Below are positions 10,014 to 35,337 of a stretch of DNA of 64,000 nucleotides, in pieces. Below the pieces are notes generated by a model. It was not told the DNA's origin. It saw nothing but the letters and a program-made list of their open reading frames with translations, and did not search any database. The stretch lies in the NCBI RefSeq assembly GCF_006345805.1, contig NC_043012.1, positions 35,464,001 through 35,528,000 of the forward strand, given 5' to 3'. Source of the stretch: Octopus sinensis (lineage: Eukaryota). Made by a program: the position numbers and the translations under genes. Each line of letters begins with the position of its first letter. Within the stretch, counting starts at the first letter, position 1.

Positions 10014-10052
<39 letters not shown>

Positions 10053-10140
10053 TATATACACCTCCTACACAATCACTTCATATAGAAACATGCGCATATA
10101 TATACCTATGTCTATGCACACATACATATGTACTTATATA

Positions 10141-10201
<61 letters not shown>

Positions 10202-10718
10202 AAATATATACACACACACATGCATACCTACTCTCACATCCAAGACACCTGCTCTGTACACACACCTCTTAGATAACCAATTAATCTGACACACACACAT
10301 ACTTCCGCAAAACCTGATACATATATATACATATTTATATATATGTGTGTGTGTGTGTGTGGTTTTATATATATATATAATATCACTATATATCTATTCA
10401 TTCATCATCATCATATATATATATATATATATACACACACATACTTATATATGTATGTGTCTTGTTTTTGTTCCCAACTATGACCCTCCATAAATCCCAA
10501 ATTTTATTTTCATACTTATGGGAGCAACTGTCTTCGAAGACTCATAGTTCAATGCTCAGAATGAGGAGTAGATGGACAGCCGACAACTGATGAAGGGTCG
10601 TTCTTTATGTTACTTGTCCTGTTTTCTATTTGTTTCTCTCGTTGTTTGCATATTGAACTCAATTTGTTTTCATATTTCATGTTGTTTACTGTTGGTGACG
10701 TCCTGTACCCATATGTGC

Positions 10719-10753
<35 letters not shown>

Positions 10754-11660
10754 CTTATCTTTCCATGCACTCTATAATCATGCCATATATAAATGTGTGT
10801 GTATACACACACACACAAAGTCTCATTTGATCAACTTTCCAGTTGGTTGCAGCCTGTTTCATTAGGTTTTAATTGATGTTGTTGTTGTTGTTGTTGCCTT
10901 TGTTTAGCTCCAAATCTGGGGCACATCAATACTCAGACATTCCAGCTCCAATCGCCCTGTTTTTTTAGACTTCTGCCTCAGACTACAGTACTCAATATAC
11001 CCTTAACATTTTTGAAGATAGTAAAATATGACTTGAGGGTGATTTGACTGTTGTTTCTAGCATATCAAGCTACCATGTAGAGGTTCCCTGGTTGGTTTTG
11101 TTTCTCTTGTTGTTGTTGTTGTTTATCAGTTTTGATAACAGTTTCTGCTGGATCCACAGATGTTCCAAATGTGTCACACACGAATACTTTTCAGTGTTTT
11201 GGAAGTTGATCAATGAAGTCTGGATTTAGGGCAGCAGATGAGTGGGGGTCGTTAAAGCTCTGCATGAGACATCTTGTGTGTGCTGTATTCTGAGTTCAAA
11301 TCTCACCATAGTCTACTTGTTTGGTATTCTTAATCCATCACCCAGCCAAACACCACCACCCGGTCCCTGGGTACCTTTAGCAGAATCCATTCCGCTGCAA
11401 GCATTTGGACCGGGTCTTCTTTTTCTGGATGCCTTTTTCCCCTCCCTCCTTCCTACAAGTGTCAGAGACCCTTTAATAAGGTCGTGAATGAATCCCTTTC
11501 TCACTTGGTGTAACCCAGCTACAGCCATTTTGAGAGTTTTGATGCTCAAAAGTTTCTGTTTGTGTTTCTGTCGCAATGGCTTTGTCGGTTCCACTCAAGA
11601 TTCAATGACATACTTTGATGAAACGTTCTTCAGTTATACACTGGCCTTGCAGCTGTTAAC

Positions 11661-11711
<51 letters not shown>

Positions 11712-17700: not shown

Positions 17701-20700
17701 AAGTGCAGTGAAACTGAAATTAACCAAGCGTGTCATTGAGGACGGAAACTTTTCATTGAAAACTCAGAAAGCTTCACAGATTTCTTCCATCACTGACGAT
17801 AAAGTCAAGGTAAGGGCCTCTGGTCAAAGGGTTTGTATTTTAAAATACATTCTTAAAAGGACCTTTCCTTGGTTAACCCTTTTTGATGTCAACCCCCTTG
17901 GGACCTCCCCCCCTGCTTCTGTGATTCAAACTTTCTTTTAAAGGGATCAAAATTCAGCCTTCCATCAATATTCTGTCTAAATTTAAGGGTCCAAACCCCA
18001 GCTTAATTATGACTAAGTTATTTTACTAAATTCTTCAGGTGCAGGAATGGCAGTGTGGTTAAGAGGCCCCTTTTTTCAACCATGTGGTTTTGGGTTCAGT
18101 CCCAACACATGGCACATTGGGCTTGTCTCTTCTGCTAACCACCCTGGGCTTGGCTAATGCCTTCTCAGTGAATTTGGCCGACAAAATTTGTGTAGAAGTC
18201 CTTCATGGGTGTGTGCCTTTATGTTGGTATTTCTTCTTCCACTGTTTCGTATTCGGTGTTGGTTTGTTTATGTCTCTGTGACTTAGCAGTTTGGCAGAAA
18301 AAAAAAAAGACTTAGAATATGTCCCAGGTTAAAAATAAGTCCTGGGGTCGATTTGTTCAACCCTTTGAGGTGGTGCTCCAGCATGGCTGCTGTCTAAAAA
18401 GCTGAAACAAGTAAAAGAATTAAGAGATCATTTTCAAAATTAATTAAAATAAAAGCAGAATATTCTAACAGAATTCTGGGAAACAAAAGGTCTAAGATAA
18501 AAAGATGGTATTTGAGGGAGATTCAGATGCTTCTTTCTAATATGTCTAGAAAATAGAGAAGCCTTCTCATTGGCTCATATTTAGTACATAATATATAGCT
18601 TATTAGTGTTGTTTAACCCTAGGTCAAGCCTGATCCAACCGATGAGAGATGTTACAACTGTTAGAGCGGCTAACTGGCTTCTGTGCTGGTGGCATGTAAG
18701 AGGCACCATTCAAGCGTGATTGTTACCAGCATCGCCTTACTGGCACCTGTGCCGTTGGCATGTGTAAAATGATTCGAGCGAGGTCGTTGCCAGTACCGCC
18801 TGACTGGCCCCCGTGCCGGTGGCATGTAAAAGCACCCCCTACACTCTCGGAGTGGTTGGCATTAGGAAGGGCATCCAGCTGTAGAAACTCTGCCAGATCA
18901 AGACTGGAGCCTGGTGCAACCATCTGGTTCGCCAGCCCTTAGTCAAATTGTCCAACCCATGCTAGCATGGAAAGCAGACGTTAAACGATGTTGATATATT
19001 ATTCACTGTGTCCTTCCTTTTATAAAGCACTGCGTTTAGCTGATATTTCTAGCAGTTTGTATGATTGCCTAGAGGCTTTTTCATTAATTCATCTGTTCTG
19101 TTTAAGGGGTGGCAGTAGCCTGGGCTTGGTGGTGGGTTTGATGATGATGATGATGGTGATAATGTTGATGATGATGTTTGTGTTTCATTTTGCAGCTGCA
19201 AGATATTCTGAAGTTTGGGGTTGACAAACTGCTGCAGAACCCTTCTGGGGACACTCCCTTGTCCATTGACTTCACTGCTGTATTGGGCAGCTCGGACGAC
19301 AATCAGTGGACAGTAAGTGACCAAGAAGAAGCAACAGATTTGGTGGGACAGCAGGTAAGTGACCAGTGTGTTACTGTAGTCTTAGTTGGAGATGACAATT
19401 ATGATGATGGGTACTGTTTGGTACTGGGTCACTCTATTTGAACATTTGGTCACCCTATCTGAATTTAGGGTTTCCATATTTGCATATTACTGAAGATGAC
19501 TTTAGAACCTCCACACCACCCTGAAACTTGCCACTTTTCAAAGCAAACATGAAATGATCATGATTTTTGAATACAGGGTTAATCTGTCTGAATTGTGGGT
19601 TGCTATGTCCAGTTGGGCATACACCTGGGCATCAGTGGGTTACCATAATTGACTCTGAATCTTTGTATGACTGTGTAATCACGAAAGACGTGTGTATGAC
19701 AGCAGGTAACATGCCTATCTAACGAGGTAACATGCCTATCTCCAGCAATCCATCATATACGACCAAATTTTACCTTTCCTCAACTCACAATGTGGTTGTA
19801 TGGTCAGTTATATCACAGACCAATGGCCTACCAAATGCTCAATGTATGGCCATAGCTGTATTGTAGTGTAATTAGATATAGCATTATATCACTGTATGAC
19901 CATATCTGGTTGTGACTTATATGTGATTTAACCCTTTCGTTACTATATTTCTGACCAAATTACACCCCTTATGTGTTTCAATTAATTTCTAACGTAATCA
20001 TAAATTTAGTCTGGTTTCATTAAACAACTATAACTTTTTTATTTATCGATATATTAATCTGATTTTTGGAAGATAATTTAATGAAATATTCTCAACCAAT
20101 TCTATACTATAATTTTTGTCACTAAGTGACTCTAATTGCAGGTAGATACAGGTAAATTCAACAAAATATAAAATTATTAAAATTTTGTTCAAACATCGCT
20201 ATAGAAAATGGGTTATTAGCTAATATTCAATTGGGTATACAACAAAATTTTACGATAGAATTTGTTATTCTGGGTAACTTTCTGATACCCATAATAATAT
20301 TTATGGCAAAATAGTCTTAATTTCATTTAAGGTTTGGTTGGAAACCACAAACTATCCTTTCTTTCGCTTTGTTTACGTTTAGCGTAACGGTTCGTTTTCG
20401 CCGTAATGATTTCAAATAGGCTCATTCGAAGAAGTAAAAAGAAATAGTCTAAGGCTTTACTCCTCTGGGAAAGTCTGTGGCTTGGTCCAGTTTCTTCAGA
20501 AAAATCACCGAAAGAAACAGTTTTTAAATTTTCACTCCATTCAGGTGCCAATTCGTTTTCTTTATCGCTGTCGGAGCTCTAAGATTCAGTTTTCACTTTC
20601 GGAAAATGAAACATCAGATTCATTATCAAATACCACATGCTTTTTTTTTTCAGTCATAGAGTTAGATTTATGAAGGTCTTCAGTAGAAAATCCTTCGAAT

Positions 20701-23700
20701 TCTGACTCGCTGCTTGATATAATGAAATTCGTATCCATTTTTTGTCAGAATTACAAATTTTGAAAACACAAAAGGAACAAATTTCGGAAAAAAATCTCCC
20801 AAAATTCACGGAATTAAAATTACACTTCGATTATTGTACAAAACTGTAGTTGAACTGTTTACGAAGTATAATACGTGTTTTCACGAATGTACTAAAGAGA
20901 TTTGCTCTGATATTCTCATTTAAATATGAATAGGTAAATTCGGGCGGTTTGGTCACATTAACCAAAATTTTTTTCGGGCGGCTTTGGGCGGTTTGGTAAC
21001 GAAAGGGTTAACCATATATGGTTATGATGCATTGTACATCACTGTATGACCATATTTGGTTGTGACTTATATGTGATTTAACCATATATGGTTATGATGC
21101 ATTGCACATCACTGTATGACCATATTTGGTTGTGACTTATATGTGATTTAACCATATATGGTTATGATGCATTGCACATCACTATGACCATATTTGGTTG
21201 TGACTTATATGTGATTTAACCATATATGGTTATGATGCATTGCACATCACTGTATGACCATATTTGGTTGTGACTTATATGTGATTTAACCATATATGGT
21301 TATGATGCATTGCACATCACTGTATGACCATATTTGGTTGTGACTTATATGTGATTTAACCATATATGGTTATGATGCATTGCACATCACTGTATGACCA
21401 TATTTGGTTGTGACTTATATGTGATTTAACCATATATGGTTATGATGCATTGCACATCACTGTATGACCATATTTGGTTGTGACTTATATGTGATTTAAC
21501 CTTATATGGTTATGATGCATTGCACATCACTGTATGACCATATTTGGTAAAGCTGTATTACAGTATTTCACTGTGTGGCCATATTTGCTTGTGATGTATT
21601 GCAACATCATATGGCAATATAAACTTGTGTCAGTATGCCCATATATGGTAAAATTCACGCACACACACACACCTCTACCTTCCCCTCTATATACCATTGT
21701 TGTTGCTCTTTTCTGTCAGTGTTTCAAAACCAATGATGACGCAGAAGATCAACCATCCACGATTTACCAATTTGAAGGTTTGGACTATTCTAAAGCGCCG
21801 TCCTCAGCTGATCTTGATGCCTTTGACACACTCGGAGAAGGTAAGTCGAAACGGTTTCAATTCTCAGATTGTCTTTGTCTTTCATTATTTTTGTCTTTTC
21901 TTTCTACCAATCCTTTGTCTTCAAAATTTCTCCCTCTGGAACTCCTTACAGTCTCGAATAGGCTTGTATATAGGGGAGTGGTAGAAATGATGTAGGCATG
22001 GACCCCTCCTCCTCTTCAACCTAAATAGTCATAAATTATGTTAATGATGTAAGATTTGTAACATTGAAACAAGCAACTAATTTGACATCAAATTCGAGAA
22101 ACCCTTTAAATGGTTGATTAACATGCTAGAAACAACAGCCAAAAATCTCCCTCAAATTACATCCCACCATTCCATTTTAAAAGACTTTAAAGAAATATGA
22201 GATGATGATATGGGAGGTTAAATCATGTTGTTGCAGAATGTATACCTGCTTTAGTAGTTGTGATGGGAGTGGTAATAAGGACATGTGCAGGGTGTAGTGT
22301 GGAGAACAGAGCATTGTGCAAACAGGGTGGTGCATATGGGGGGCAGTGCAGAGCACAGTATATTGCAGTGGAAATGATTCTTTGCCTGTAACCCTTGCAG
22401 TTCCTTCCAGACCAGTTTTTGTCACACAGCGTCCTTACTATATTTGTATGTCTACACACACACATACACACGTGTGTGTGTGTGTTACTTTGTAGCCTAA
22501 CTCGGTACTAAAAAGTTTCTGTTCCCTGTGTTTATGTTGTGTAGAAACACCAGAAATTGAGGTTGGTAAAAGAAGAAATGTCTCTGAGGCGATGCCATCC
22601 ACTTCTCGTACCAAACTGACTCCAGAACAAATTGAAGAACGAGAAAAGAAGGTGAGGAACTCTGGAATTTTTCTGAATTATATTTCGATGTGGATGGCAG
22701 AACTGGAAGGACTTGTCTTGTCGTATGATGTTATGTCCTGTAATGTTCTCAGTTCAAATCATCTTTGGATCCTGTTTACCTTTTACCTTTCTGACACAAA
22801 TAAAATAAATAATCAGGGCCTGATAGAAATCATCTAAACCAATGTTCCTCAACCATTTTTCTGCTGTGGACCCTTCTGCTTCCTATTTTACTCAGCTGGA
22901 CCCTTATAGCCATTCAATGTTCAAAAAAAAATCCTTTTATATTTTTATGATGAAATATTCTTGGGAATAGTATAAAAAAAATTTTAATATACTGTGTATT
23001 GTAGAAATATGATCAGTTTATTGCAAATAAATTTTAACAACAAAATTTTATAGGGACCCCAGTTGAGAACCCCTGATCTAAACTAGTCTCTTACGCTAAA
23101 TTACATTGCTATTGTGTTACCTGTATGGCCTTTAAAAACTGTAGGGACAGTGTGTTGCATCATAGCAAGAAGGCATTGATAAAATGTTGCCAAAAAGATG
23201 GGTGAAAGTTGAAAATTTGTTTAAAGAATCCCTTTTTATGATGTCTCAGTGATTCTTGACAACCTTTGGAAAGGTTTCACATTACATGATCCCTGGTCTT
23301 CCTCCATCTTCTCCTTCCAGTTGGTGCCTTTCTCAATGCTGTTTCTGCATACTCATGCTTTTGTTTGCACTATTGTCATCAGCCAATCAGATTCTTCATT
23401 CCACGTCTTGGAGTCTTTGCAATGATTCTTCATTTTTGATATCTTCGTCAGTGTTTTAACGTCCACTTCTCCGTGCTTGCATGGGTCAGATGGAATTTGT
23501 TGCACCAGAGTGTCTATTGCTGGCTGCCTATTCTGTCACCAACCCTCACCTCTGTTTCCCAGCAAGGTGGTATTTCCTCATGGTTGGACATGTTTTTTAT
23601 GGACAATTGGAATGAAGGACATTACCTGTATGATGATGATGGTGATGATGATGCTCATTTCCAGCTGTCATGTGATGTCAAGACAAACAGACACAAACAC

Positions 23701-26700
23701 ACACATGGCCAAAAGTTTACAACATTCTTTTACAAAATCAAAATTCTTATGGCCAAGTTCAATTCAATTCAAATATATAAAATCTTAATATTTGGACATT
23801 TGGTATAAAAATTCTAATTTTTAAACCTACATTCCAATCTTTTGTCCTTGACTCTATATATAATGGACTCTATCCTATCCAGTGTCACAGCATGGAACTG
23901 AACTCAAAACCTTGTGGTTGGGAAGTAAGCTTCTTTACCACTCAGCCATGCCTGCACCTGACATGAAATCCTCAGGTTTTTTCCTTTAAGCACCTTTACA
24001 GAAAACGCATCCAATGTTCTGGTGACTTTTTACAGTTTTCCCCCCTATTCTGCTTGCAATAGTGCCATTGGTCATCTTGTGGTGTTGGACTGGTGACTCT
24101 TGGTGTTGATGTCCAGTGTATTCATGGACCAGATTTTGTACTTCCATAGAAATCCTGCCGTTGTCTTTGAGATTTTGTATCTGGCATCAATTTCAGCATC
24201 TCCATCATCGCAGAGAACACTGCCAAAGTGTACAAATCAACTCATGTCTTCATCAATCTGATTAATACAGACTAATCTGAGACTAAACAACAATAGGTTT
24301 TTGGTGTCGTCCCTTGCTCCCTCCCTACACATCTCTGGGTGTGTTTCAGATGTTATTGTTACACTCTAACTAATGTTGGTTCCATGTTCTTCCAAAATAG
24401 CGCAAGGAGACTTTAGAACGGAAACTGAAGGAACGAGAGGCCTTGGCCAGAAAAAGGGCTGCTGAGAAGGAAGAAAAGAAGTGAGTGACTTTTACATCGA
24501 GAGACTTTAGACTCAGTCATTGAATACTATACATGCATCCATGCACCATTTCACATCCACTTTTCCATGCTTGCATGGGTTGGATGGAGTTTAATGGGGC
24601 AGATTTTTCTATTGCAGAATGCCCTTCCTGTCACCAACCCTCACCTGTTTCCAAGCAACGTAATGTCCACCCCTTCCATGGACAAACATGTTTTTCATGG
24701 AAGAATGAAAATAAACAACCTTGCTTGTATGATTCTTGTTTACACCCATCACCAGATGTCTAGATCTTGTTTACAACCATCACCAGATGTCTAGACAAAG
24801 ACACACACACATATATATATACACACGACGGGCTTCTTTCAGTTCCCATCTACCAAATCCATTCAACATGCTTTGTAGAAGACTCTTGCCCAAAATTCCA
24901 TACAGTGGGATTGATCCCAAGACCGCATGGTTGAAAAGCAAGCTTCTTTACCACACAATCACACCTGTGCCTATATGTATATAGTGTTATTTAACACAAT
25001 ATGTCTATAAGAGATATTATTTCAGGCTGAATACTGCAGTTAATTTGGCTTTTCGTAATATATTTGCATTGAGTATGATACACAGGTGATAAATGAAAAG
25101 GAGTTGGTGACAGTGACATACCTGTGTACAATTAATATTATATATATATATGTACACAGGTATGTCATATTTTCTGTTGTCTTTTTATTTAATCCTGAAA
25201 ATATATATAAACACACACACACTCTATCATCATCATCATTTAACGTCCGTTCTCCATGCTAGCATGGGTTGGACAGTTCGACCAGGGTCTGGGAAGCCAG
25301 AAGGCTGCACCAGACTCCAATCTGATCTGGCAGTGTTTCTACAGTTGGATGCCCTTCCTAACGCCAACCACTCCGTGAGTGTAGTGGGTGCATTTTACGT
25401 GCCAGGGGAGGCTGGCAATGGCCACGATCGGTTGGTGCTTTTTACGTGCCACTGGCCATTGACTCTATGTATTATACATAGTAACTCACCAAAGCTGTGA
25501 GTAAAACCTTTGTCATTTCCATCTTCAGAGCAGTTTTAGTGTCACCTAGAGACCAGTGCTTCTCAAACTATCTGATGTGACCAACCAGCAGGTTTTTTTT
25601 TCTTCCAATGTACCAGGGACCAGTAATATTTCTTAGTAATATCAATTTATACCGGAAACAATATATATAATGAATATAATAAAAGTTGACAATTTTTCTG
25701 TCTTATATTTATTTTGTAAACAAATAAATACAAATATTACATCAGCATTTTATAAGCAATTTATTATGTTTCTTTCTTTTCTGGAAACTCACTGCAGACC
25801 AGCTCTGGTCTGCAGACCACCACTTTGAGTAGCACTGGCCAAGACAACATTTATGTACACTACATAGTTATTAGTTATGATGTGTGTGTGAACCTTAAAT
25901 GCTCATTAAAATAATTATATTTATTGACTAATATTGACCTTTCCATACTAGGTAATTATTTCTAATTACATTTCTAATGAGTTCTGTGTAAAAAACTTCA
26001 AAATTAACGACTTAACTATTGTTTTTCATGAGGATGGCACCTCTGGGTACTTTTCTCAAAGCGATTTCTATTTTGTTTCCAGGGCTGCTCTGTGGAAAGA
26101 AAATGGTTATGTTTCATGTAAACTGACATCAGATGGCTCTGAAGAAGACAGTGATGAGGAAGACAACTCTATAGACCCTGTGGACATTTCCTATGTGAGA
26201 GGGGACGTGACACGTCCTGTGTCCGTGCCACAGACTGACCAAAGCTTTGTCATCCATTGTATTGGTAAGCTATTGATCTCTATCTGTTTTTTGTGACCCT
26301 GTGAGGAAAGATGAGGGGAGGTGGCTTATAAAAGAGGTTTTGGCTTTCTTGATGTCCTCCATGGTTATTAGTGAGACGCAAATAAGGTGAAGAGGTGTAG
26401 TGGCTCTTAAAGGGAGTGGACTAATAACCTCATGGTTGTGAGTTCAAATCTTACCTTGGCTGCCTCCTCCTGATTGCTTCACTGGACAAATAATACATGC
26501 TTCCTTGCTTGCTTGATGGCGCTGGGGTCATGGCCAGGTTAATTGTCCCAGAGGATGCCAGCCACTCTGCATCCTCCAGGATGACATTGAGCCCCTGGAG
26601 ATCTTGCTTAATCGCTTCCAACCCCTGCTGTGTCAAATGAGAGTAAGGCTCTGTTAGGATAATCTAACAGGAGGTGGAGGACATGTTCGTGCCAGCATAT

Positions 26701-29700
26701 GCAGTGGATGGCTATGAGGTGGGAAGCTGGATAGGCACTCACAGTCCTTTGTTGGAAACATGCTACCATCTGATGTTCTTGATGGTTCTCAGGGCTCTGC
26801 TATCAAAGCCATTGATCCTTTTTGCCAGGGTCTTTGTGAGAGGCTATGTTTCTTCTCCATAGAAGAGAACAGAAGACCGAGTTGTGGCAGATGCAGAGCT
26901 TTGTCTTCTGAGAGATAAATCAATGGCGCAAAAGGGGGCTTCTATAGGGAATACATGACCATGACATCCAGACCCCCATCTGTGGTTCATATCCAGGGTT
27001 AGGTCTCTGTTGTTGGTGGACTTTAAAAAAATGTTGGAAACACATCACCATCTTACAATCAGAAATGCTTGTTTTGCAATCTTCCATGCAAATATGTCCG
27101 GACTAAGAGAAAATATTTCCCTTCCTTGGAAACAGGTGATGGTTGGCAACAGGGAGAGCCTCCAGCCATAGGAAATCTGCCTCAATGAATTCTTTCTGAT
27201 CCATGCAAGCATAGAAAAGTAGGCTTTTCCCTGCAATGACGATGTATTGATATGGTGTATCTGCAATAATAATTCTTGTCTTTTCATCAGACGATTCCGG
27301 CCAGTGGGGTGTAGGAGGGGTATTTACTGCCATCACAACAAGATCAGCGATTCCAAAGACACAGTATGAATTGGCCAAAGAGATGAAAGGTAAGTGGAGG
27401 GGGCTGGTTGGTGGTTATCTTTTGTGGAGGAAATAAGGGTTTTAGCACTGCTGTGTGTGTGTGTATATACATGTGTTTGGTGCTGCCGGACCACTTCCAT
27501 GTTTATTCAACTCTGGTATGCTGTCACATGACACTGAAACAACCAATGAAATGTGATATTTGATTCACTTCTCTCATCATGGTTGTGTATTAGAAATACC
27601 TATTTCTTTACTACCCACAAGGGGCTAAACACAGAGGAGACAAACAAGGACAGACACACGGATTAAGTTGATTATATCGACCCCAGTGTGTAACTGGTAC
27701 TTATTTAATCGACCCCGAAAGGATGAAAGGCAAAATCGACCTCAGCGGAATTTGAACTCAGAACATAGCGACAGACGAAATACGCTTAGCATTTTGCCCG
27801 TCGCGCTAACGATTCACCAGTTTATGGAGAGTGAAGAGTAGTGTGAAAATGAACGATACAAGTAGGAGGGGCAGAAAGGCTCAATGTTCTGCAGACCTGC
27901 AGTTTGTACCCTTGTTATATAGGCTCGTGTGTGTGTTCTGATGTAGACATGATTGTGTGTCACCTTATCTTGACACAGCTGTGTCTCCCCCCTCTTGTTA
28001 TGTAGACAAATCCATGAGCAGATGTCATGTGAACCTAATTGTGTGCCTGTTTGTCATGTAGACACAACTGTCTGTTGTTGATAATCCTAACATGCCCACC
28101 TCTCCATTGTCCACTTTCAGATATAAACCTTGGCGACTGTCATTTAATTACTCTGAATGACGACGAACAGTGTTGGGTAAGTAAAAACTCCCACTCACTG
28201 CCACCACTCAGTGTTGCCTTCACTCACACTCACTAATTTATTTCTCTATATTCTGATATTTTCTGATGCTTTAGTTTCTATTGTGCCACACCTCTGTAGT
28301 CCCTATTGTGCCACCATCTATATATAGTTCCCTGCTAACACACCTGACATTCTCCACCGTTTCCTTTCCAGCTGGCCCTTATTGTAGCCCAACATCGAAC
28401 TAAAAGTAATAATTTATCTGGGATCAAGATGGAGGCTTTAAAAGATGGACTGAAGAAGGTTTCTGTTGTGGCAAGACAAAGAAATGGTAAATTAGCATTA
28501 TCTTTCCTTTTTATATGTGTCCCCTATAGGGGCAGCACCATAGCTGATTGACTGGTATCAACCAATTGTGAGATTCCATCCATTCACGTTTGGATAATGT
28601 TTTATAGATCAAGACTGGAGCATCATCACTTGGACATTTATGAGTCTTTGGACATAAGTTTACTAATCATGACTGACCCGGGGCTAAACAGTAGCAATGA
28701 CATTATGATCACTAGTTAAGTGGGCAGCAGTATAGCTGATATTTGGACCTTTGAACATCTAAAACTGAATCAAATATGAAGTGAAAGGAATAAACAAACA
28801 AAACAGAATTTTAGTCAGTGGTTATTAATAATTTTCCAGTAAATAATAGGGGAGACAACTGTTAAGTGTTTCTACCTTATTGAACATCATTAGCATGAGT
28901 GTAATCAAACTATAAGCTACTTGAATCTACAGGTTTATAAACTGAAGTGTATCTAGGGCAAATAAAAGTACAAGATTTCCCCACTACAAAGGATACATTG
29001 CAGGGTTAACTCTCAAAAGTTATCACTGGTAATGCTTATTAGCTGAGTAAACCTGAGCAATGTGAAGTGAAGTACGTTGTTCAAGGAAACAACTCTGTCC
29101 AGTCCAAAAATTGAACCCACAATTATGAACTCACTCAGCTGTACACCATCTAACTTGCCAAAGTTACAAGAAATCAACACTCCAAGAATTCATTTGTTTT
29201 TGTTTGGTTTCTATGTCTGCTTTCCCATGCTGGCATGGGTTAGAAGAATACATTATTATGACATTGTTTTACAGTTGGATGCGCTTTGTGTTGCTAACCC
29301 TTGATAATTGCTCACATGAGAAGTCACTTATTTCACGTTTTTGAAGGCATGAAACCAGCAGATGATTTGTCGACAGAAGAAATAACAATAATATCACTAT
29401 TTATAGCTCAGCTGTTTTTGGACAAGTACAAATCATCATCATTTAATGTCCATGTTGGCATGGGTTGGACAGTTTGACCAGGGCTGACAGACTGGATGCT
29501 CTTCGTAATGTCAACCAATCCAAGTGTGTAATGGGTGTTTTTACGTGCCACCGACACGGGTGCCATTTGTATGACACCAATATCTGCCACAACTGCGGTT
29601 TTTCTTGGCTTGATGTGTCTTCTTCTCAAGCTTAGCAAATGAACTTGGTCATTGCCTCCATGAGACCCAATGCCTGAAGGCCAGCATAATGCCAAATGGT

Positions 29701-32700
29701 CCCAGTCCTTGCCTCCATGAGGCCCAATGCTCAGAAGGTGCTTTTACGTGCCATGGGCACGAGTGCCATTTGCGTGACACCAGTATCTGCCACAACTGTG
29801 ATTTTTCTCGGCTTGATGGATCTTCTTCACAAGCATAACATAATGCCAAAGGTCTCAGCTGTTACCTCTCTGGGGAGGCCTAAATCTCAGCCATTGCCTC
29901 TGTAAACAAAAATACACATGCATATATGCATCCACCCACTACCCATACATACCTCCCCCACACACACACCCGCATGCACACACACGCACACATATAGTTT
30001 ATTGCAGATCTATGAGCCTGACAAAATATATTTCTAAACTTTGGATGGGGATATATTTGAGTCCAGATCTCATGTCCAGAAGCTCTTCTTGTGGCCAACC
30101 CTTAGCTGTTTTTCAAGTAAGATATTTTTTAATTCCATTCTTTGAATGACTGGTCATAATGGCAACAAGAAGTGTAAACCTCATTCAATGTTTTGCTCAT
30201 GCAAAGCCCATGGGATGTCAACACACACACTCACATGCACACACACTTATACAACAGGCTTCCCTACAGCTCCCATTTACCAAAATTCACTCACAAAGCA
30301 GTGATTGACCCAGGGTTATAATAGAAGTCACATACCAGGTGCCACATATTGGAATTGAACCCTGAGACCACATGATTTCTTATCACACACACACACACAC
30401 TCTCGTGTATATTCTGAAAGAGAATGCAATCCTCTGCTGTATGGTGCCTTATGTAATTAATCTCTCTCACTTCTTGTCTCTGCAGCCAGTGTTCACTTAC
30501 CCAGAATAGGCCATGATACACCTTCCTTTAACTGGTATGGAACCGAGAGACTCATCCGAAAACATCTGGCAGTGAAAGGAATTCCAACTTACATGTATCC
30601 TTTGCCAAAATCTTGTTTTGTATTCAATTATTTGGAATTTGGATTGATTGATGACATTCTTATGACAGTGCTAATGTTATGACAATCTTAGAACTCATCT
30701 TGTACTATCGGAATAATGTCTGAATACTTCTAATGTTACGGTAGTTGTAATGTTACGATAGTCCTTGAGTTTTGACGGTTACTAATATTATGACAGTTGT
30801 AACTTTATGATGGTACTCTTTTAATGACTACGGTTATCTGTTACAAGAGTACTGCTCTTATGACAGTTGTAATATGATGGTACTAGTGATATGACAGTTC
30901 TTATCTTATGGTGATGCTAATGTTATGATAGTATTATGATGTTAGAGCACTTCTAATAGTTATGACAAAGCTAAATTACTGCTAGAAGAGTATTAATATT
31001 GTGACAGCTTTAATATAATTAGTACTGCACTATAGTTATAATAATTTTAATGTTATGACTGTTAATATTTTAACAATCATTTATAGATTAGATGAGTCTC
31101 TATGTTATGGAAGCATTAATTTTATAAGTATAATTAAGATACTCCTAATGTTATGATAATTCTACCATTGTCACAGCACCATTGTTCTGACAGTAATAAG
31201 TGTTTAAGATGTTCCTATATATCAGTGTGAATATTATGATATAACTTAAGACATATAACCACCATAGCAATAATTAATATACAACTAAGTATTATTATGA
31301 TTGTAGTAGTAGTAGTAGTAATGTCTAATTATTATTAGATTTTTTTTTTTTTTTACCATAAAAGAGGGAATACAAAGGAGTGACAGAGAGAGAGAGGAGA
31401 AAAGGAAAGACAAGAAACTATGGCACTACAACCAGCCAGGAACAGTCTTCGCTACATTTGCGGTACCTGCCAGAGGGAGTGTTTGTCCAGGATAGGACTA
31501 CACAGCCACAGCAGGAAATGTATCAGGACATGAAATATAAAAGCCGGACTAGACTACTTCATGCGCAACTCCATTGTCTCCCGAGACAGAAAGGATGCCA
31601 ATACAATACAAGTAGTAGTAGTAGTGGTAGTCTTCTTGTAACCAATGAATGTCACATACAAAGAGTGATTGTTTGATAATTATTGGAATTGGCTGGGACC
31701 AACCTTATGGAAACCTATTTCCAACATGGAGACAAACCTTCCAATGGCCATTCCAAGGGAGATGCAGGCATGGCAAACCAACAACAACAACATGGAGAGA
31801 AGTTCCACAGAAACTGAAGCCTTGATAAATGGCTACACTTTGTGACAACTGCAATCAGTCGCCAACAGTTGAGGAGGATGGAGACCTCTTGTTGGTGCGT
31901 TAGGCTCAACGGGGAATTAAAGGAATAAAAAGATTAATGATTTCAAATTTTGGCACAATACCAGGATGTTCAGGGGAGGGCGTAAGTTGACTACATCATC
32001 CCCAATATGCAACTGGTATTTATTTTATCAACCCCGAAATGATGAAAGGTGAAGTTGATCTCAACGAAATTTGAACTCAGAATGCAAAAGCAGATGAAAT
32101 ACTGTCAAGCATTTTGCCTGGTGTGCTAACAATTCTGTCAGTTAACAATCTTAGTAAAAAGAATACTCAGAGAGTGCAAACCTCCGCCAAGGCAGCACCA
32201 ACGTCGTCTCAAAGATTAGCCAGAGACAATTTTCAAAATGAGAATATCTGAAATAAACTCGATTGCTCTCACAAACAAGAATACTAAAAATTAACCTGAC
32301 CACTCTCAAAAATTTTTTAAAAATCAAAAAAAAAACCCAAAAATAATCCAGAAACCTTGCCTGGTACCTTATCGATCCCAAAATCTAATCAGTTGGTGCC
32401 AGTCACGAGACCAAACATCCCTGAAAGTTTCATCTGAATCCATCCTGCGGTTCTTGAGATATTTTGTCCACAGACAAACAAACACAACTGAAAACAATAC
32501 CTCCATGTTCGCTAAGGAGAAGGTAATAAGTAGTAGTAGTAGTAGTTTATAAGATGTTAATGTTGCTATGACACTGTTTTATAGGATGACATCCTCACAG
32601 CACAACTGTGGTGGCATTAGCATAGTTAATGCCATTGTGGTAGCATTGTGCTATGACACTTGTTGTGAGGTGGTTTTAAGATAATGCTAAGACTCTTCGT

Positions 32701-35337
32701 TATGACACTCACCTAAACAAACACTGTGTCTCACAAGTTCACAAACCTTCACTCAAGTTTAACTTAACTCTCACTCCAGATATTATTACCCTCGACGTGG
32801 ACATTTAAAGCGGAGAAGGTCATCACAAGAAGCTGGACCATCAACCAAAGGTCAGTTATCTGGTGGTGGTGGTGGTGGTGGTGTGGTGGTGGTGGTGGTG
32901 GTGGTCAGCATCACATCGTTTTGTTGTTGACTGTAGTAGTAGTAGTGGTGGTTGTAGAGATTGTCATAGTTTGACAGTGATTGTCATTATGTATGTGTCT
33001 GATAATATAGTGGTGGTTGCTTGTGTGGTGTTACCTTCACATTGTCCAACCATGACCACCACTAACATCACCTTTTAACCAAGTCTGTAAGTGACTGTTC
33101 ATTTTGCAGTCAAATCTCATTTAAATCACAGTTTTAAAATATCGAAAAAAAAAAGATACATTGGTTGATGTAGTCCTAGATAGACTGAACAAAAGACAAG
33201 AAATTAATTGTTAACATGTCTTTCATCATAGATTTGCCATCTCAAGGCTAGCCTTGGGCTAAACAACGATGACCATAATTTAACTCCCTTTAGTTAACCT
33301 CTCTAACTAATTCTTCAATTTTTTTCTCATGTCCAGATGATGTACCATCCCCTGTTGCATCGCCAGGCCCTGCATCGCCAGGCCCTGCATCACCTGTTTG
33401 CTCTACGTCTCAAGGAGGAACCAAAAAGCAAAATGGATTGCTGGAAACATTCCAAGGACTTTCTCTTCATCTCTGGAAGTGCAACCCGGAAGACAGCAAG
33501 ATGTACAAACGCTACATTATTGCATATCCTTTTGGTTTTTTTGTTTGTTTGGCCGTGTGGACTGACCAGTGTTGACCATTCCACATTCAGATTTCTCTGT
33601 CAGTTGTAATACTTATTTGTTGGCATTTTATAAAGGAGTCCTGCATTATCTTGTAGCTTTGAGACTTTGATGATGTAGGGCAGGTGTAAGAGGCCTGATC
33701 TGGTCAGTTGCAACATAAGAGTCTTTGGCCTGGTCTGGCCAGTTTAAATGCTAAAATGTTAAACATAGTCTTCACATCTGTTTCCTTATAAACACAGATA
33801 TGAGGGAATATGATGGATTCTGCTATGGCTTTGTGAGTGAGTTTGGTTGATGGAAACTATAAGAAGCCCATCATATATTTGTTTGTGTCTCCTCGTATGA
33901 GGGTAATGCTCGTTTGCAAGTATCACACAGTCCTTCTGGAAACATGTTTGACCTCGGGGAAAGATTTATCTTGGAAACAGGTACGGGTCGGCAACAAGAA
34001 AGGCATCCAACTGTGGAAAATCTGTTTCAATGAATTCCATCTGTGTGACCCATGCATCATCATCGTCATCATTATTTAACGTCCACTTTCCATGCTGGCA
34101 TGGGTTGGACAGTTTGACATGAAGCAGTCCAGACTCCAACTGTCTGTTGTGGCATAGTTTCTACAGCTGGAAGCCCTTCCTAATGCCAACCACTCAACGG
34201 GGTGTGCTGGGTGCTTTCTACATGTCACTATCCTTTTCCATGCAAACATGGAAAAGTTGATGCCAAAAGAATGGCGCTGGCGATCATGATATTTGTTTTT
34301 TGCCGTTTTGTTTTTGGTTCCCTGGTTCCAGTCCTTAACTCTGTTCACTTACGATGGAGAGTTTCATTCAGAAATAACAGAAAGTACAACCCATGTTGTT
34401 GTCTGCGTCAACAGTGACATAGAGGTGAGTACAAGATCTGTGACAACACTAGTGCCAAGAAATTATCAATCCAGTTCTGGAGATGATTTAACCAGTTAAC
34501 ATCATCTCCCCTTAAAGTTTCTGACCTTGTGCCTTATTTAAAAACTATTTGCTTTTTAGGGTTGATAAAATAAGTACCAGTCATGTACTGAGGGTCGATG
34601 TAATCGACCAAATCCTTCTCTCTAAATCTTGCTGGCCTTGTGCCAAAGTTTGATACCATTGTTATTGTGTTACTCACAAAAGATACTCATTTACTCCAAT
34701 CTAATTTCTATTGAAAATCTGTAGAGAAAACTTTAAAAGTAACTGAATTGCACTGCTAACACAGGCAGGACAGAGTATTGACTGGTAAGCCCTTAATATT
34801 CTTGGTAATAGAGTTGCATAATGAAAGAGTGTCCCCACCAGAAGTTAATTGTAACAAACAGTTTGCATAGTTTCTTGCATAATCTTTTGAAGATTTTAAT
34901 TAAAATATGAAGATTGAGAGTGTTTCCGTTAAATAACCAGGGCTAGTTTCAAACAGGTTGGGATCAAAATGAGTTACACTTGCCTTCCCCCTGGTCCTCG
35001 TTGGTTTAACTCCTTCAAATACTTGTCATCATTCTCTACAATCAACCACACAACAGCAGAACTAGGCATTTCCCCCTCTCACACACTCACTACAGTCAAC
35101 CCTGGATTCAATAGATGTGCACACCCTTTCTCTATTCCACCCCAGTGTAAGATACCCACATTATTCTATCTATCTATAATTTACTAAGGTATTTCCTCCT
35201 TAATATTTCAGGATCTTGCCTCGACCATGCGCTATGCCTCGTCTACTGCGTTTGTGGTGAGCGTAAAATGGCTGCGGAAATGTCTGAAGACGGGTCAGTG
35301 TTGTCCAGTCGAGCCTTTTGAAGTAGACATTCAGTAA
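1290..35337 (+). CDS. CHD1L: CHD1L/ALC1 chromatin remodeller, 5'-partial, 20 coding exons (SNF2 ATPase, linker, macrodomain, C-terminal BRCT-like domain)
   Basis: Exon phases all match and give 2478 nt ending in TAA at 35335-35337. Peptides match CHD1L as recalled: [118 protein letters not shown]. Confidence 0.97.
2682..2837 (+). CDS. CHD1L: CHD1L exon
   Basis: tttcag|CC ... CACA|gtaagg; [50 protein letters not shown]; phase 1 to 1. Confidence 0.95.
3747..3965. repeat. Degenerate 41-bp tandem repeat (about 5 copies)
   Basis: Unit close to TTCCTTTCAAGTGTTGGGCCTCATGGAGGCAAATAGCCGAG; related units on the opposite strand near 29645-29735. Confidence 0.8.
4341..4448 (+). CDS. CHD1L: CHD1L exon
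   Basis: ttgcag|TG ... GATG|gtgagt; [19 protein letters not shown]. Confidence 0.95.
4868..5232 (+). mobile_element. tRNA-derived SINE with CORE-like domain (ggcaccttgggcaagtgtcttct)
   Basis: Copies at about 8555-8915, 18038-18420, 50345-50490, and antisense at about 16090-16240 and 24825-24970. Consistent with the CORE-containing octopus SINEs (OR type); exact family not assigned. Confidence 0.75.
5711..6001. mobile_element. piggyBac-type MITE (about 290 bp), same terminal family as 19932-21007
   Basis: TTAA at 5707-10, ends GGTAACAAAAGGG followed by degraded TTCA. Related degraded copies near 6935-7145 and 17875-18500 (the latter split by a SINE). Confidence 0.7.
7261..7431 (+). CDS. CHD1L: CHD1L exon
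   Basis: ctttag|GT ... AGAG|gtaaaa; [26 protein letters not shown]...[18 protein letters not shown]. Confidence 0.96.
9217..9443 (+). mobile_element. tRNA-derived SINE (central motif tttcatcctttcggggtcgataaattaagtaccag)
   Basis: Pol III box-like head (gagctggcagaaacgttagc...gttcaaattcc). Further copies at about 6694-6860, 17191-17412, 27599-27820 (-), 31915-32145 (-), 44718-44890 (-), 51058-51272, 60500-60890. Confidence 0.85.
9470..9601. repeat. (CT)n-rich compound microsatellite
   Basis: Direct inspection. Other simple repeats include (TA)n 10018-10060 and 10154-10192, (CT)n 11665-11712, (GGT)n 32861-32902, (CA)/(GT)n at many sites. Confidence 0.95.
12352..12465 (+). CDS. CHD1L: CHD1L exon
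   Basis: gtttag|GC ... GCAG|gtgagt; [37 protein letters not shown]. Confidence 0.96.
14757..14871 (+). CDS. CHD1L: CHD1L exon (helicase motifs V-VI)
   Basis: aaccag|GT ... TCTCG|gtatgt; [38 protein letters not shown]; phase 1 to 2. Confidence 0.96.
17641..17809 (+). CDS. CHD1L: CHD1L exon
   Basis: aaccag|C ... AAG|gtaagg; [39 protein letters not shown]; phase 2 to 0. Confidence 0.95.
19196..19354 (+). CDS. CHD1L: CHD1L exon (alternative in-frame donor at 19312)
   Basis: ttgcag|CTG ... CAG|gtaagt; [13 protein letters not shown]...[19 protein letters not shown]. Confidence 0.88.
19932..21007. mobile_element. Non-autonomous piggyBac-type element (1076 bp)
   Basis: TTAA at 19928-31 and 21008-11; 12-bp perfect TIR CCCTTTCGTTAC/GTAACGAAAGGG; three GGGCGG(T/C)TT repeats near the right end; no transposase ORF. 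Confidence 0.88.
21012..21547. repeat. 70-bp minisatellite, about 7.7 near-identical copies
   Basis: Unit CCATATATGGTTATGATGCATTGCACATCACTGTATGACCATATTTGGTTGTGACTTATATGTGATTTAA; copy 3 has a 2-nt deletion; a partial unit lies left of the piggyBac element (about 19881-19931). Confidence 0.97.
21720..21840 (+). CDS. CHD1L: CHD1L exon
   Basis: tgtcag|TGT ... GAAG|gtaagt; [22 protein letters not shown] (human recalled as MYLFEGKDYSKEPS). Confidence 0.9.
22545..22651 (+). CDS. CHD1L: CHD1L exon (linker)
   Basis: gtgtag|AA ... AAG|gtgagg; [13 protein letters not shown] (human recalled as VLSPEELEDRQKK). Confidence 0.85.
23990..24300 (-). mobile_element. Degraded RTE-like LINE fragment
   Basis: Minus-strand frame [24 protein letters not shown] resembles the RTE motif F.YLGS.I..DG....DI..RI.KA. 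Confidence 0.55.
24401..24480 (+). CDS. CHD1L: CHD1L exon (charged helical linker)
   Basis: aaatag|CGC ... AAGAA|gtgagt; [26 protein letters not shown]; phase 0 to 2 fits both neighbours. Confidence 0.85.
26083..26264 (+). CDS. CHD1L: CHD1L exon (regulatory linker and start of macrodomain)
   Basis: ttccag|G ... ATTG|gtaagc; [13 protein letters not shown]...[11 protein letters not shown]...FVIHCI. Confidence 0.94.
26430..26960 (-). mobile_element. Degraded RTE-clade LINE fragment (3' part of ORF2)
   Basis: Minus-strand frame reads [39 protein letters not shown], resembling the post-RT RTE motif VLLYGxETWxL...FD.RCLR.I. Confidence 0.75.
27291..27389 (+). CDS. CHD1L: CHD1L exon (macrodomain)
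   Basis: catcag|AC ... AAAG|gtaagt; [33 protein letters not shown]. Confidence 0.95.
28121..28176 (+). CDS. CHD1L: CHD1L exon (macrodomain)
   Basis: tttcag|AT ... TGG|gtaagt; [19 protein letters not shown]. Confidence 0.88.
28372..28486 (+). CDS. CHD1L: CHD1L exon (macrodomain)
   Basis: ttccag|CTG ... AATG|gtaaat; [30 protein letters not shown]. Confidence 0.96.
30486..30594 (+). CDS. CHD1L: CHD1L exon (end of macrodomain), followed by U12-type donor
   Basis: ctgcag|CC ... TACAT|gtatcctttg; [35 protein letters not shown]. Confidence 0.95.
30595..32779 (+). other. U12-type (minor spliceosome) GT-AG intron
   Basis: 5' end GTATCCTTT (U12 consensus RTATCCTTT). CTTAAC at 32763-32768 lies shortly before the AG at 32778-32779, with no long polypyrimidine tract. 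Splicing restores GIPTY-I-YYYPR (human recalled as GIPTYIYYFPR). Confidence 0.85.
32157..32527 (+). mobile_element. Putative non-autonomous Helentron-like (HINE-type) element inside the U12 GT-AG intron
   Basis: 5' subterminal CCTCCGCCAAGG (32181-32192) and degenerate complementary 3' end CCTCC...GGAGAAGGTAA; layout recalled from similar elements, not confirmed. Confidence 0.45.
32780..32850 (+). CDS. CHD1L: CHD1L exon
   Basis: ctccag|A TAT TAT TAC CCT CGA ... AAAG|gtcagt; [23 protein letters not shown]; phase 2 to 1. Confidence 0.88.
33337..33523 (+). CDS. CHD1L: CHD1L exon (SP-rich linker and start of BRCT-like domain), followed by AT-AC donor
   Basis: gtccag|AT ... ATTGC|atatcctttt; [29 protein letters not shown]; phase 1 to 2. 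Confidence 0.85.
33524..34348 (+). other. U12-type AT-AC intron (825 nt)
   Basis: Starts ATATCCTTT (33524-33532). TCCTTAAC branch site at 34332-34339, ends AC at 34347-34348. Joining gives RYIIA-YDGE in frame. Confidence 0.92.
34349..34424 (+). CDS. CHD1L: CHD1L exon (BRCT-like domain)
   Basis: gttcac|T TAC GAT GGA ... GAG|gtgagt; [25 protein letters not shown]. Confidence 0.88.

What the first reader, a model, noticed from the sequence alone, without database searches (positions are those of the whole stretch)
33524..34348. AT-AC minor-spliceosome intron inside a BRCT-like domain of CHD1L
Seen: a textbook U12 intron, with ATATCCTTT donor, TCCTTAAC branch site about 10 nt from an AC acceptor, and an in-frame join RYIIA|YDGE. 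Established: AT-AC introns are a small minority of the already rare U12 class. Inference: GT-AG-only gene predictors are likely to mis-model or truncate this gene end, so the full protein may be missing from annotations.
Basis: partly seen in the sequence, partly recalled or inferred. Interest (0 to 1): 0.7.

Follow-up and report, generated by a model that had tools for sequence, protein, structure and literature searches.

The report
Conserved AT-AC minor intron in CHD1L
The flagged 825 bases are very probably a real minor-spliceosome (U12, AT-AC) intron that splits the C-terminal BRCT domain of a CHD1L/ALC1 chromatin-remodeller gene.

Summary
The donor ATATCCTTTT starts at 33524, the branch site TCCTTAAC is at 34332-34339, and the AC acceptor ends at 34348. 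The intron is phase 2 (GC|T = Ala) and the join reads RYIIA-YDGE.

Motifs alone are not significant: about half of simulated 64-kb sequences contain such a motif pair. The context is what decides it:
- Joining exons A, B and C gives a complete LIG3/XRCC1-type BRCT domain (Pfam E = 7e-13; AlphaFold pLDDT 92).
- A profile built from 27 relatives scores this join best of 217 possible joins.
- The fish Trematomus bernacchii has an AT-AC U12 intron at the same codon and phase.

The BRCT domain belongs to CHD1L. A 71-nt linking exon (32780-32850) is reached through a second U12 intron of the GT-AG type (30595-32779, donor GTATCCTTT). That intron is conserved at the same codon in fish and two unnamed relatives, and its donor reads through at that codon in a primate model. 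Macro-plus-BRCT CHD1L proteins occur in a sponge, in fishes and in unnamed invertebrates, but not in human.

No RNA data could be used, and no gene model for this locus was available, so the claim that annotations miss this gene end is untested here. A coral model is truncated at this intron, and a primate and a killifish model at the upstream one. Verdict: real, a new member of a known kind, of modest interest.

The parts
1260..30594 (+). Upstream part of the CHD1L/ALC1 gene; its 5' end lies outside the window. SNF2 ATPase exons are near 1260-1400, 4480-4558, 7230-7400, 14714-14830 and 17640-17740. Macro-domain exons are near 26090-26263, 27290-27388, 28114-28164, 28372-28485 and 30486-30594.
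   Evidence: Pfam SNF2-rel_dom and Helicase_C on exon peptides. The last macro exon aligns to human CHD1L residues 836-878. tblastn of relatives maps the macro exons. Boundaries other than 30486-30594 are approximate.
30486..30594 (+). Last macro-domain exon (...[36 protein letters not shown] + AT)
   Evidence: Acceptor ctgcag|CC; the exon ends ...TAC AT before GTATCC.
30595..32779 (+). U12-type GT-AG intron (2185 nt, phase 2). Donor GTATCCTTT at 30595-30603. Near-consensus branch site AACTTAAC at 32761-32768, with its A 12 nt before the AG at 32778-32779.
   Evidence: The spliced product GIPTY-I-YYYPRR matches human GIPTYIYYFPRS better than the read-through [12 protein letters not shown] (70.5 against 65.7 bits). 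The same donor at the same codon is seen in fish DNA and in L002/L003 DNA. It is also implied by read-through models of Saguinus and Nematolebias. Human CHD1L is reported to have a 3'-end U12 intron (PMC4066798).
32780..32850 (+). Linker exon X (71 nt): (I)[23 protein letters not shown](D). It enters in phase 2 and leaves in phase 1.
   Evidence: ORF continuity. tblastn matches to YYYPRKHNLLKRK, YYYPRRQKGVKRK and YYFPRHGHHK of relatives.
32851..33336 (+). U2-type intron (GTCAGT ... tttttttctcatgtccag)
33337..33523 (+). Exon A: Pro/Ser-rich linker and the first third of the BRCT domain (...[29 protein letters not shown])
33524..34348 (+). The finding: a U12-type AT-AC intron (825 nt, phase 2). 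Donor ATATCCTTTT at 33524-33533. Branch site TCCTTAAC at 34332-34339. AC at 34347-34348.
34349..34424 (+). Exon B: middle of the BRCT domain ([25 protein letters not shown])
34425..35211 (+). U2-type intron (GTGAGT ... ttaatatttcag). A U12-like motif TCCTTAAT lies at 35197-35204, just upstream of the AG.
   Evidence: The equivalent fish intron is plain U2-type.
35212..35337 (+). Last coding exon C: end of the BRCT domain ([41 protein letters not shown]) and the stop codon TAA at 35335-35337

Best explanation
Positions 33524-34348 are a U12-dependent (minor-spliceosome) intron of the AT-AC subtype in the 3' part of a CHD1L/ALC1 orthologue.

Mechanism, from established knowledge of minor splicing rather than from tests here: U11 snRNP pairs with the ATATCCTTT 5' splice site. 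U12 snRNP pairs with TCCTTAAC and bulges the branch adenosine 10-11 nt upstream of the AC. U4atac/U6atac.U5 then catalyse removal.

Splicing fuses GC|T into an Ala codon and recreates the conserved RY[IV][IV]AYDG[DE] core of a single C-terminal BRCT domain of the LIG3/XRCC1-BRCT2 class.

The gene has a second minor intron (GT-AG, 30595-32779) between the macro domain and a 71-nt linker exon. Production of the macro-plus-BRCT protein therefore needs two minor-spliceosome events.

Both introns are old. The GT-AG intron is shared with fish and two unnamed animals, and its donor reads through at the same codon in a primate model. The AT-AC intron is shared with a teleost and, judging from a read-through model, with a coral. 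The BRCT domain and its AT-AC intron are absent from human CHD1L, which ends about 20 residues after YYFPRS.
For: Shown directly:
- Motifs, spacing, phase and the in-frame join.
- Exon A alone or exon B alone gives only marginal Pfam hits (E = 0.17 and 0.075). A+B+C gives LIG3_BRCT E = 7.4e-13 over positions 2-77 of 78 and BRCT_2 over 3-86 of 86.
- The joined sequence aligns without a gap across the junction to 12 and to 23 relatives.
- An HMM built from 27 relatives, without this sequence, scores the AT-AC join 81.4 bits, the maximum of 217 joins. The best GT/GC-AG alternative scores 69.7 bits and read-through 21.2 bits.
- AlphaFold2 gives mean pLDDT 92.2 and pTM 0.84, with pLDDT 97 over the junction and a canonical BRCT topology. 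The top PDB neighbours are XRCC1 BRCT2 and LIG3 BRCT.
- In Trematomus bernacchii genomic DNA the same codon is split AC|ATATCCTTC ... TCCTTAGC-9 nt-AC|G TAT GAC GGA (phase 2). The upstream intron there is CAT|GTATCCTTT ... TCCTTAAC-11 nt-CAG|A TAC TAT.
- The coral Pocillopora model ends RYLVA-YPLIS, which is the translation of GC|ATATCC... read through.
- One ORF runs from the macro exon to the BRCT stop codon.
- Relatives have macro plus BRCT in one polypeptide (P0005, P0017, P0023, P0042, P0046, P0047, fish, and sponge proteins that NCBI names CHD1L).

From the literature:
- Human CHD1L has a U12 intron near its 3' end (PMC4066798).
- Molluscs are comparatively rich in minor introns (PMC10639083).
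Against: - No transcript evidence for this organism could be consulted.
- Motif pairs of this kind arise by chance in about half of simulated 64-kb sequences, so the motifs add little on their own.
- Protein-level evidence cannot distinguish junctions shifted by 1-4 nt, because they encode the same peptide. The exact boundaries rest on the AT-AC/U12 motifs and the fish parallel.
- A T-rich tract followed by AG at 34330-34331, just upstream of the branch site, could act as a cryptic U2-type acceptor.
- Two unnamed relatives (L002, L003) have no intron at this position, so the intron is not universal.
- The coral evidence is protein-level only, because the locus could not be fetched.
- Presence of minor-spliceosome snRNAs in this genome was not tested.
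Confidence: 0.9

Rival explanations
1. The gap between exons A and B is removed by the major spliceosome at nearby GT/GC-AG sites, for example donor 33543 (TTT|GTTTGT) or 33535 with acceptor 34332 (after ...ggttccag) or 34360. The U12-like motifs would then be coincidental.
For: Twenty in-frame, stop-free GT/GC-AG combinations exist. A pyrimidine-rich tract precedes the AG at 34330-34331. Motif pairs alone are common by chance.
Against: All 20 alternatives insert or delete residues inside the invariant RYxxAYDG core. They score 12 bits or more below the AT-AC join (69.7 bits or less, against 81.4). None of the alternative donors resembles GTRAGT. No relative has an insertion there. The fish orthologue uses AT-AC at the same codon.
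Confidence: 0.04
2. The BRCT exons (32780-35337) are not part of the CHD1L mRNA. They would be a separate downstream gene, or a decaying and unexpressed remnant, with CHD1L ending in the read-through tail ...[34 protein letters not shown] as a human-like macro-terminal protein.
For: Read-through of the 30595 donor reaches a stop after 27 further codons, giving a protein that ends where human CHD1L ends. No RNA data are available. No database protein contains this BRCT.
Against: Exon A has no in-frame start codon before the domain and needs one base from an upstream exon. The only frame-compatible chain found runs from the macro exon through exon X. The spliced GIPTYIYYYPRR matches human and other CHD1L proteins better than the read-through does. 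All five exons are intact with no stops, and the domain folds at pLDDT 92, so nothing suggests decay. Macro plus BRCT in one protein is found in a sponge, in fishes and in several unnamed taxa.
Confidence: 0.04
3. The intron is real, but the BRCT-containing 3' end is only one of two regulated isoforms. Inefficient minor splicing or retention of intron 1 or intron 2, possibly with polyadenylation inside intron 1, would give a macro-terminal or BRCT-truncated protein. The two minor introns would then act as a switch rather than as constitutive introns.
For: Retention of either intron gives a short in-frame tail and a stop: TYMYPLPKS...VLML* and [21 protein letters not shown]. AATAAA/ATTAAA signals lie inside intron 1 at 31916, 31924 and 32252. 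In human cells the CHD1L transcript with its U12 intron unspliced is stabilised by exosome (RRP41) knockdown (PMC4066798). Minor introns have been proposed as switches (PMC3728624, abstract listed).
Against: This is purely inferential here. The poly(A)-like hexamers lie in a transposon-rich, AT-rich intron and are expected by chance. Transcripts with retained introns are more likely to be degraded than translated.
Confidence: 0.15

Closest known systems
U12-type (minor-spliceosome) introns, AT-AC subtype
   Same: 5' splice site ATATCCTTT. Branch site TCCTTAAC 10-11 nt from the 3' end. AC terminus. One or two such introns among many U2-type introns in a long, intron-rich gene. Position conserved across phyla.
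   Different: Nothing unusual. The only mildly notable points are that the gene has two minor introns close together, and that a pyrimidine-rich stretch and an AG lie just upstream of the branch site.
[quoted passage not shown]
   Same: Same codon (the residue before YDG of the BRCT motif), same phase 2, AT-AC termini, ATATCCTT donor, branch-like motif 9-11 nt from AC. It is preceded by the same GT-AG U12 intron after GI(P/H)T(Y/F).
   Different: The split codon is Thr (AC|G) rather than Ala (GC|T). The branch motif is TCCTTAGC. The intron is 956 nt against 825 nt. The fish has no separate 71-nt linker exon; its linker and first BRCT part are one exon.
U12 intron near the 3' end of human CHD1L (PMC4066798)
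   Same: It is probably the orthologue of the upstream GT-AG U12 intron at 30595-32779. A primate model (Saguinus, P0067) reads through AT|GTATCCTTT at the same GIPTY codon.
   Different: It is not the flagged intron. Human CHD1L (897 aa) has no BRCT domain and therefore no counterpart of the AT-AC intron. The position of the human intron was not checked on human DNA here.
BRCT domains of DNA ligase III-alpha and XRCC1 (BRCT2), PDB 3pc8, 6wh1, 3pc6
   Same: Best Pfam family (LIG3_BRCT) and best structural neighbours (TM about 0.75-0.8). A single C-terminal BRCT with the RYxxA[YF]DG motif.
   Different: Only about 20-27% identical. It is attached to an SNF2-macro remodeller instead of a ligase or scaffold. 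Dimerisation or partner binding is untested.

Membership tests
U12-type intron (AT-AC subtype) | 5' splice site matching /[AG]TATCCTT immediately after the exon | tested here: met
   ATATCCTTTT at 33524-33533.
U12-type intron (AT-AC subtype) | Branch-site motif TCCTTRAY close to the 3' splice site (about 8-15 nt) | tested here: met
   TCCTTAAC at 34332-34339. The A at 34338 is 10 nt from the last intron base, 34348.
U12-type intron (AT-AC subtype) | Terminal dinucleotides AT...AC, giving an in-frame and biologically sensible join | tested here: met
   AT at 33524-33525 and AC at 34347-34348. The join restores the BRCT core and is the best of 217 joins.
U12-type intron (AT-AC subtype) | No dependence on a polypyrimidine tract | tested here: inconclusive
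   The last 20 nt are 75% pyrimidine and a T-rich stretch lies upstream of the branch site. This neither supports nor excludes U12 splicing.
U12-type intron (AT-AC subtype) | A U12-type intron at the homologous position in orthologues | tested here: met
   AT-AC U12 intron at the same codon and phase in Trematomus. A coral model reads through the same donor. The intron is absent in L002 and L003.
U12-type intron (AT-AC subtype) | Actual removal by the U11/U12-U4atac/U6atac spliceosome (spliced reads, sensitivity to minor-spliceosome depletion), and presence of those snRNAs in the genome | not testable with these tools
   No RNA data or whole genome of this organism was available. The literature reports minor introns in molluscs (PMC10639083).
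CHD1L / ALC1 | SNF2-family ATPase (SNF2_N plus Helicase_C) | tested here: met
   Exon peptides hit SNF2-rel_dom (1.2e-8) and Helicase_C (1.2e-7). The N-terminal part lies outside the window.
CHD1L / ALC1 | C-terminal macro domain orthologous to that of human CHD1L | tested here: met
   The last macro exon matches human CHD1L 836-881 with E = 1.5e-18. The other macro exons were mapped with relatives. The best database hits are proteins named CHD1L.
CHD1L / ALC1 | BRCT exons belong to the same transcript as the SNF2/macro exons | tested here: inconclusive
   Supported by a single continuous ORF and by macro plus BRCT in one protein in many relatives. No RNA of this organism was examined.
BRCT domain, LIG3/XRCC1-BRCT2 class | Full-length match above the Pfam gathering score | tested here: met
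   LIG3_BRCT 49.1 bits (cut-off 27), BRCT_2 36.2 bits (27.3), BRCT 26.1 bits (21.3).
BRCT domain, LIG3/XRCC1-BRCT2 class | BRCT fold (beta1-alpha1-beta2-beta3-alpha2-beta4-alpha3) | tested here: met
   AlphaFold2 pLDDT 92.2. The top Foldseek hits are 6wh1, 3pc8 and 3pc6, with probability 1.00 and TM 0.75-0.79.
BRCT domain, LIG3/XRCC1-BRCT2 class | BRCT-BRCT dimerisation with XRCC1/LIG3, or poly(ADP-ribose) or phosphopeptide binding | not testable with these tools
   Function is inferred from family resemblance only.

The most novel reading that the evidence does not exclude
The ancestral metazoan CHD1L/ALC1 carried a C-terminal LIG3/XRCC1-type BRCT domain, lost in tetrapods. Access to that domain is gated by two tandem minor introns (GT-AG, then AT-AC). 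Minor-spliceosome activity would then decide whether the cell makes a macro-only, human-like remodeller or a macro-plus-BRCT form that can dock on XRCC1/LIG3-type partners at DNA breaks. I found no paper describing a CHD1L BRCT domain.
Probability: 0.12. Interest if true: 0.5.

Novelty: new member of a known kind. Interest (0 to 1): 0.3.

Why it matters
There are three reasons, all modest.

- **Annotation.** The correct 3' end of this CHD1L gene needs two minor introns to be recognised. A coral CHD1L model is truncated by reading through the AT-AC donor, and a primate and a killifish model by reading through the upstream GT-AG U12 donor. The gene end is therefore a realistic trap for gene predictors, and domain catalogues may under-report the BRCT.
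- **Evolution.** An AT-AC intron at one codon is shared between a mollusc-like genome and a teleost, and probably a coral. This adds a clean example of deep positional conservation of minor introns. It also shows that macro plus BRCT is an old CHD1L architecture that mammals lost.
- **Function.** A LIG3/XRCC1-class BRCT on a poly(ADP-ribose)-activated remodeller suggests a direct link to the XRCC1/LIG3 single-strand-break repair scaffold outside tetrapods. That would be worth one experiment.

None of this changes what is known about how minor introns work.

Tried and rejected
- **Word-index search with the joined BRCT peptide.** It returned nothing. This shows only that no close copy is in that database, not that the peptide is unreal.
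- **Looking for an existing gene model of this locus.** I queried with the macro-domain region. No protein above 63% identity appeared apart from short genomic read-through fragments (P0071, 84%). The 'missing from annotations' claim therefore stays untested.
- **Joining the 30595 donor to other acceptors.**
  - Directly to the exon A acceptor at 33337: the phases are incompatible.
  - To the AG at 33292-33293, which has a TTTAAC 10 nt upstream: gives an immediate stop.
  - To the TCCTTAAT/AG acceptor at 35211: causes a frameshift.
  - All were rejected in favour of exon X.
- **Significance from motifs alone.** Rejected after simulation.
- **U2-type alternatives.** Enumerated and rejected on profile score.
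- **Sponge and coral loci.** Fetching the Amphimedon and Pocillopora loci failed because they are not on record.
- **Hosted RNAs.** An Rfam scan of 30400-35600 found no hosted snoRNA or other RNA family.
- **Literature.** Searches for a described CHD1L BRCT domain, and for the SRA/ENA accessions of the relatives, found nothing useful.
- **Transposon in intron 1.** Pfam on the transposon-like ORF in intron 1 (31362-31673) gave no hit.

Full report
**Observation.** The upstream exon ends ...AAG ATG TAC AAA CGC TAC ATT ATT GC at 33523. The next bases are ATATCCTTTT (33524-33533). TCCTTAAC lies at 34332-34339. The intron ends ...TCTGTTCAC at 34348, and the next exon begins T TAC GAT GGA GAG. The intron is 825 nt and phase 2. 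GC|T makes Ala, and the product reads ...[35 protein letters not shown]. The second A of the branch motif is 10 nt from the last intron base.

**Is it more than chance?** The motifs alone are not. Strict [AG]TATCCTT occurs twice on each strand, close to the 2.4 expected from simulation. In 400 first-order Markov simulations of the window, about 50% of strands had at least one strict donor paired within 10 kb with TCCTTRAY followed by AC/AG at 8-15 nt and matching termini. The case rests on context, set out below.

**The exons form a BRCT domain only when joined this way.**
- Exon A (33337-33523) or exon B (34349-34424) alone gives marginal Pfam hits (E = 0.17 and 0.075). Exons A+B+C (C = 35212-35337, ending in TAA) give LIG3_BRCT E = 7.4e-13 over profile positions 2-77 of 78, BRCT_2 over 3-86 of 86, and BRCT 1e-5.
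- In alignments with 12 and with 23 relatives there is no gap at the junction, which falls inside the most conserved motif, RY[IV][IV]AYDG[DE].
- I built an HMM from 27 relatives, without this sequence, and scored every in-frame, stop-free join. These were all GT/GC-AG pairs in a broad range plus every pair of cut points within about 12 nt of the proposed boundaries, 217 in all. The AT-AC join scores highest at 81.4 bits. The best GT/GC-AG alternative scores 69.7 bits with a poor donor, and read-through of exon A scores 21.2 bits.
- Cut points shifted together by 1-4 nt encode the same peptide, so the protein evidence fixes the junction only to within a few bases. Among those, only 33524/34348 has recognised termini and the U12 motifs.
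- AlphaFold2 with the alignment gives mean pLDDT 92.2 and pTM 0.84, a canonical BRCT topology, and pLDDT 97 over the junction. The nearest solved structures are XRCC1 BRCT2 and DNA ligase III BRCT.

**The domain belongs to CHD1L, through a second U12 intron.**
- On the + strand upstream lie exons with SNF2 and Helicase_C motifs and macro-domain exons that align to human CHD1L. The 5' end of the gene is outside the window.
- Exon A has no start codon of its own and needs one base from an upstream exon.
- Homology to human CHD1L appears to break at ...GIPTYM, and there the DNA reads CAT|GTATCCTTT (30595). This is the only other strict U12 donor on the strand.
- A 71-nt exon X (32780-32850) is preceded by TTTAACTTAAC-11 nt-AG, with the branch A 12 nt from the 3' end, and is followed by GTCAGT. 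It accepts phase 2 and delivers phase 1, exactly what the two flanks require.
- The chain 30486-30594 / 32780-32850 / 33337-33523 / 34349-34424 / 35212-35337 is one ORF.
- The spliced product [14 protein letters not shown] matches human GIPTYIYYFPRS better than the unspliced [12 protein letters not shown] does (70.5 against 65.7 bits). Exon X aligns to YYYPRKHNLLKRK, YYYPRRQKGVKRK and YYFPRHGHHK of relatives.

**Relatives.**
- The exhaustive HMMER search with the BRCT peptide gave 29 hits, the best at E = 1e-7. The long ones are DNA ligase III. P0005, P0017 and P0023 contain the end of the CHD1L macro domain and this BRCT in one polypeptide.
- A profile search added 26 proteins. [quoted passage not shown]
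- Macro plus BRCT is therefore an old and widespread CHD1L architecture. The human protein (897 aa) ends about 20 residues after YYFPRS.
- I found no paper that mentions a BRCT domain in CHD1L.

**Conservation of the introns.**
- In Trematomus genomic DNA (L001) both introns are present at the same codons and phases:
  - ACC TTC AT|GTATCCTTTCAT ... TCCTTAAC-11 nt-CAG|A TAC TAT CAC
  - CTC GTC AC|ATATCCTTCATC ... TCCTTAGC-9 nt-AC|G TAT GAC GGA GAC
- The third intron is ordinary U2-type in both species.
- Two unnamed relatives (L002, L003) keep a U12-like first intron (GTATCCTTT and GTATCCCTC, with branch-like motifs about 11 nt from CAG). They have uninterrupted DNA across RY[IL]VAY[GD]GD, so the AT-AC intron has been lost or was never gained there.
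- Read-through gene models give protein-level evidence for further species:
  - Saguinus oedipus ends ...[13 protein letters not shown] and Nematolebias whitei ends ...GVPTFMYPISIS. Both read through the first U12 donor.
  - Pocillopora verrucosa ends ...RYLVAYPLISIF, reading through the AT-AC donor.
- Human CHD1L is reported to have a U12 intron at the 3' end of its transcript (PMC4066798). Taken with the Saguinus model, I infer that it is the orthologue of the 30595 intron. I did not check human DNA.

**Mechanism.** That the intron is removed by the U11/U12-dependent spliceosome follows from the established rules for this intron class. It is inferred here, not shown. The two minor introns make the BRCT-bearing form dependent on minor splicing. 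Retention of either intron gives a short tail and a stop. Whether this is used for regulation is speculation. The BRCT class suggests BRCT-BRCT pairing with XRCC1/LIG3-type partners, or poly(ADP-ribose) binding. This too is inference.

**What could not be settled.**
- No RNA data were available.
- The organism could not be named. The closest fragment, P0071, is 84% identical and comes from unnamed SRA runs.
- No gene model of this locus was in the databases.
The literature I read says only that most minor introns are GT-AG (PMC10639083).

**Verdict.** This is a real feature, correctly interpreted. It is a new (or possibly already annotated) member of a well-known intron class, orthologous to an AT-AC intron annotated in fish CHD1L. 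Interest is modest. The useful additions are the second U12 intron, the linker exon, the deep conservation, and the observation that CHD1L outside tetrapods carries a BRCT domain.

Noticed in passing
window 30595-32779 (+): A second U12-type intron (GT-AG; donor GTATCCTTT, branch-like AACTTAAC 12 nt from the AG) lies between the macro domain and a 71-nt linker exon. It is conserved at the same codon in fish and two unnamed taxa, and its donor reads through at that codon in a primate model.
   Followed up: yes
P0072 (Pocillopora verrucosa), P0067 (Saguinus oedipus), P0063 (Nematolebias whitei): Three published 'CHD1L' gene models end by translating straight through a U12 donor: [20 protein letters not shown] and GVPTF-MYPIS. 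They are apparently truncated at the AT-AC intron (coral) or at the GT-AG U12 intron (primate, killifish).
   Followed up: partly
window 34055-34229, with copies at about 842-1019, 1738-1909, 3971-4117, 6116-6300, 12512-12677, 18819-18994, 25226-25404, 36792-36966, 46491-46669, 47690-47869, 50578-50755 and 55707-55892: A ~170-180-nt interspersed repeat (67-76% identical copies, both orientations) has one copy inside the AT-AC intron. It looks SINE-like, and no Rfam family matched within 30400-35600.
   Followed up: partly
window 35197-35204 (+): A U12-like branch motif, TCCTTAAT, sits 6 nt upstream of the AG of the last intron, whose donor (GTGAGT at 34425) is clearly U2-type. The equivalent fish intron has no such motif. 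It is probably coincidence, but it would allow the 30595 donor to pair with it, giving a frameshifted product.
   Followed up: partly
window 42004-42865 (+) and 43857-44096 (+): Transposase remnants lie downstream of the gene: a Tc1-like element (HTH_Tnp_Tc3_2 E = 1e-18 and DDE_3 E = 2e-13, in different frames, so degraded) and a mariner fragment (Transposase_1 E = 6e-19).
   Followed up: partly
window 46823-47158 (-): An exon-like ORF on the minus strand matches the Syndetin C-terminal domain (VPS50/CCDC132-like, E = 2e-17). The neighbouring gene is therefore convergent with CHD1L. Other minus-strand ORFs between 49 and 59 kb had no Pfam hit.
   Followed up: no
window 31384-31530 (+), inside intron 1: An ORF with a Cys/His-rich tail ([21 protein letters not shown]) resembles the C-terminal end of LINE ORF2 proteins, by my recollection only. 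Pfam gave no hit.
   Followed up: partly
window 30690-31160 (+): An AT-rich stretch just after the read-through stop codon is full of degenerate repeats of ...TTATGACAGT.../...ATGTTATGA.... It was not analysed.
   Followed up: no
L002 (ENA ERZ19489075 contig_3110) and L003 (Logan SRR17504025): Two unnamed eukaryotic contigs carry CHD1L macro-plus-BRCT genes with very short introns (about 130-260 nt). Their first intron is U12-like and translates in frame, so ORF callers fused the exons. Adenylosuccinate-synthetase exons lie next to the gene in L002.
   Followed up: partly
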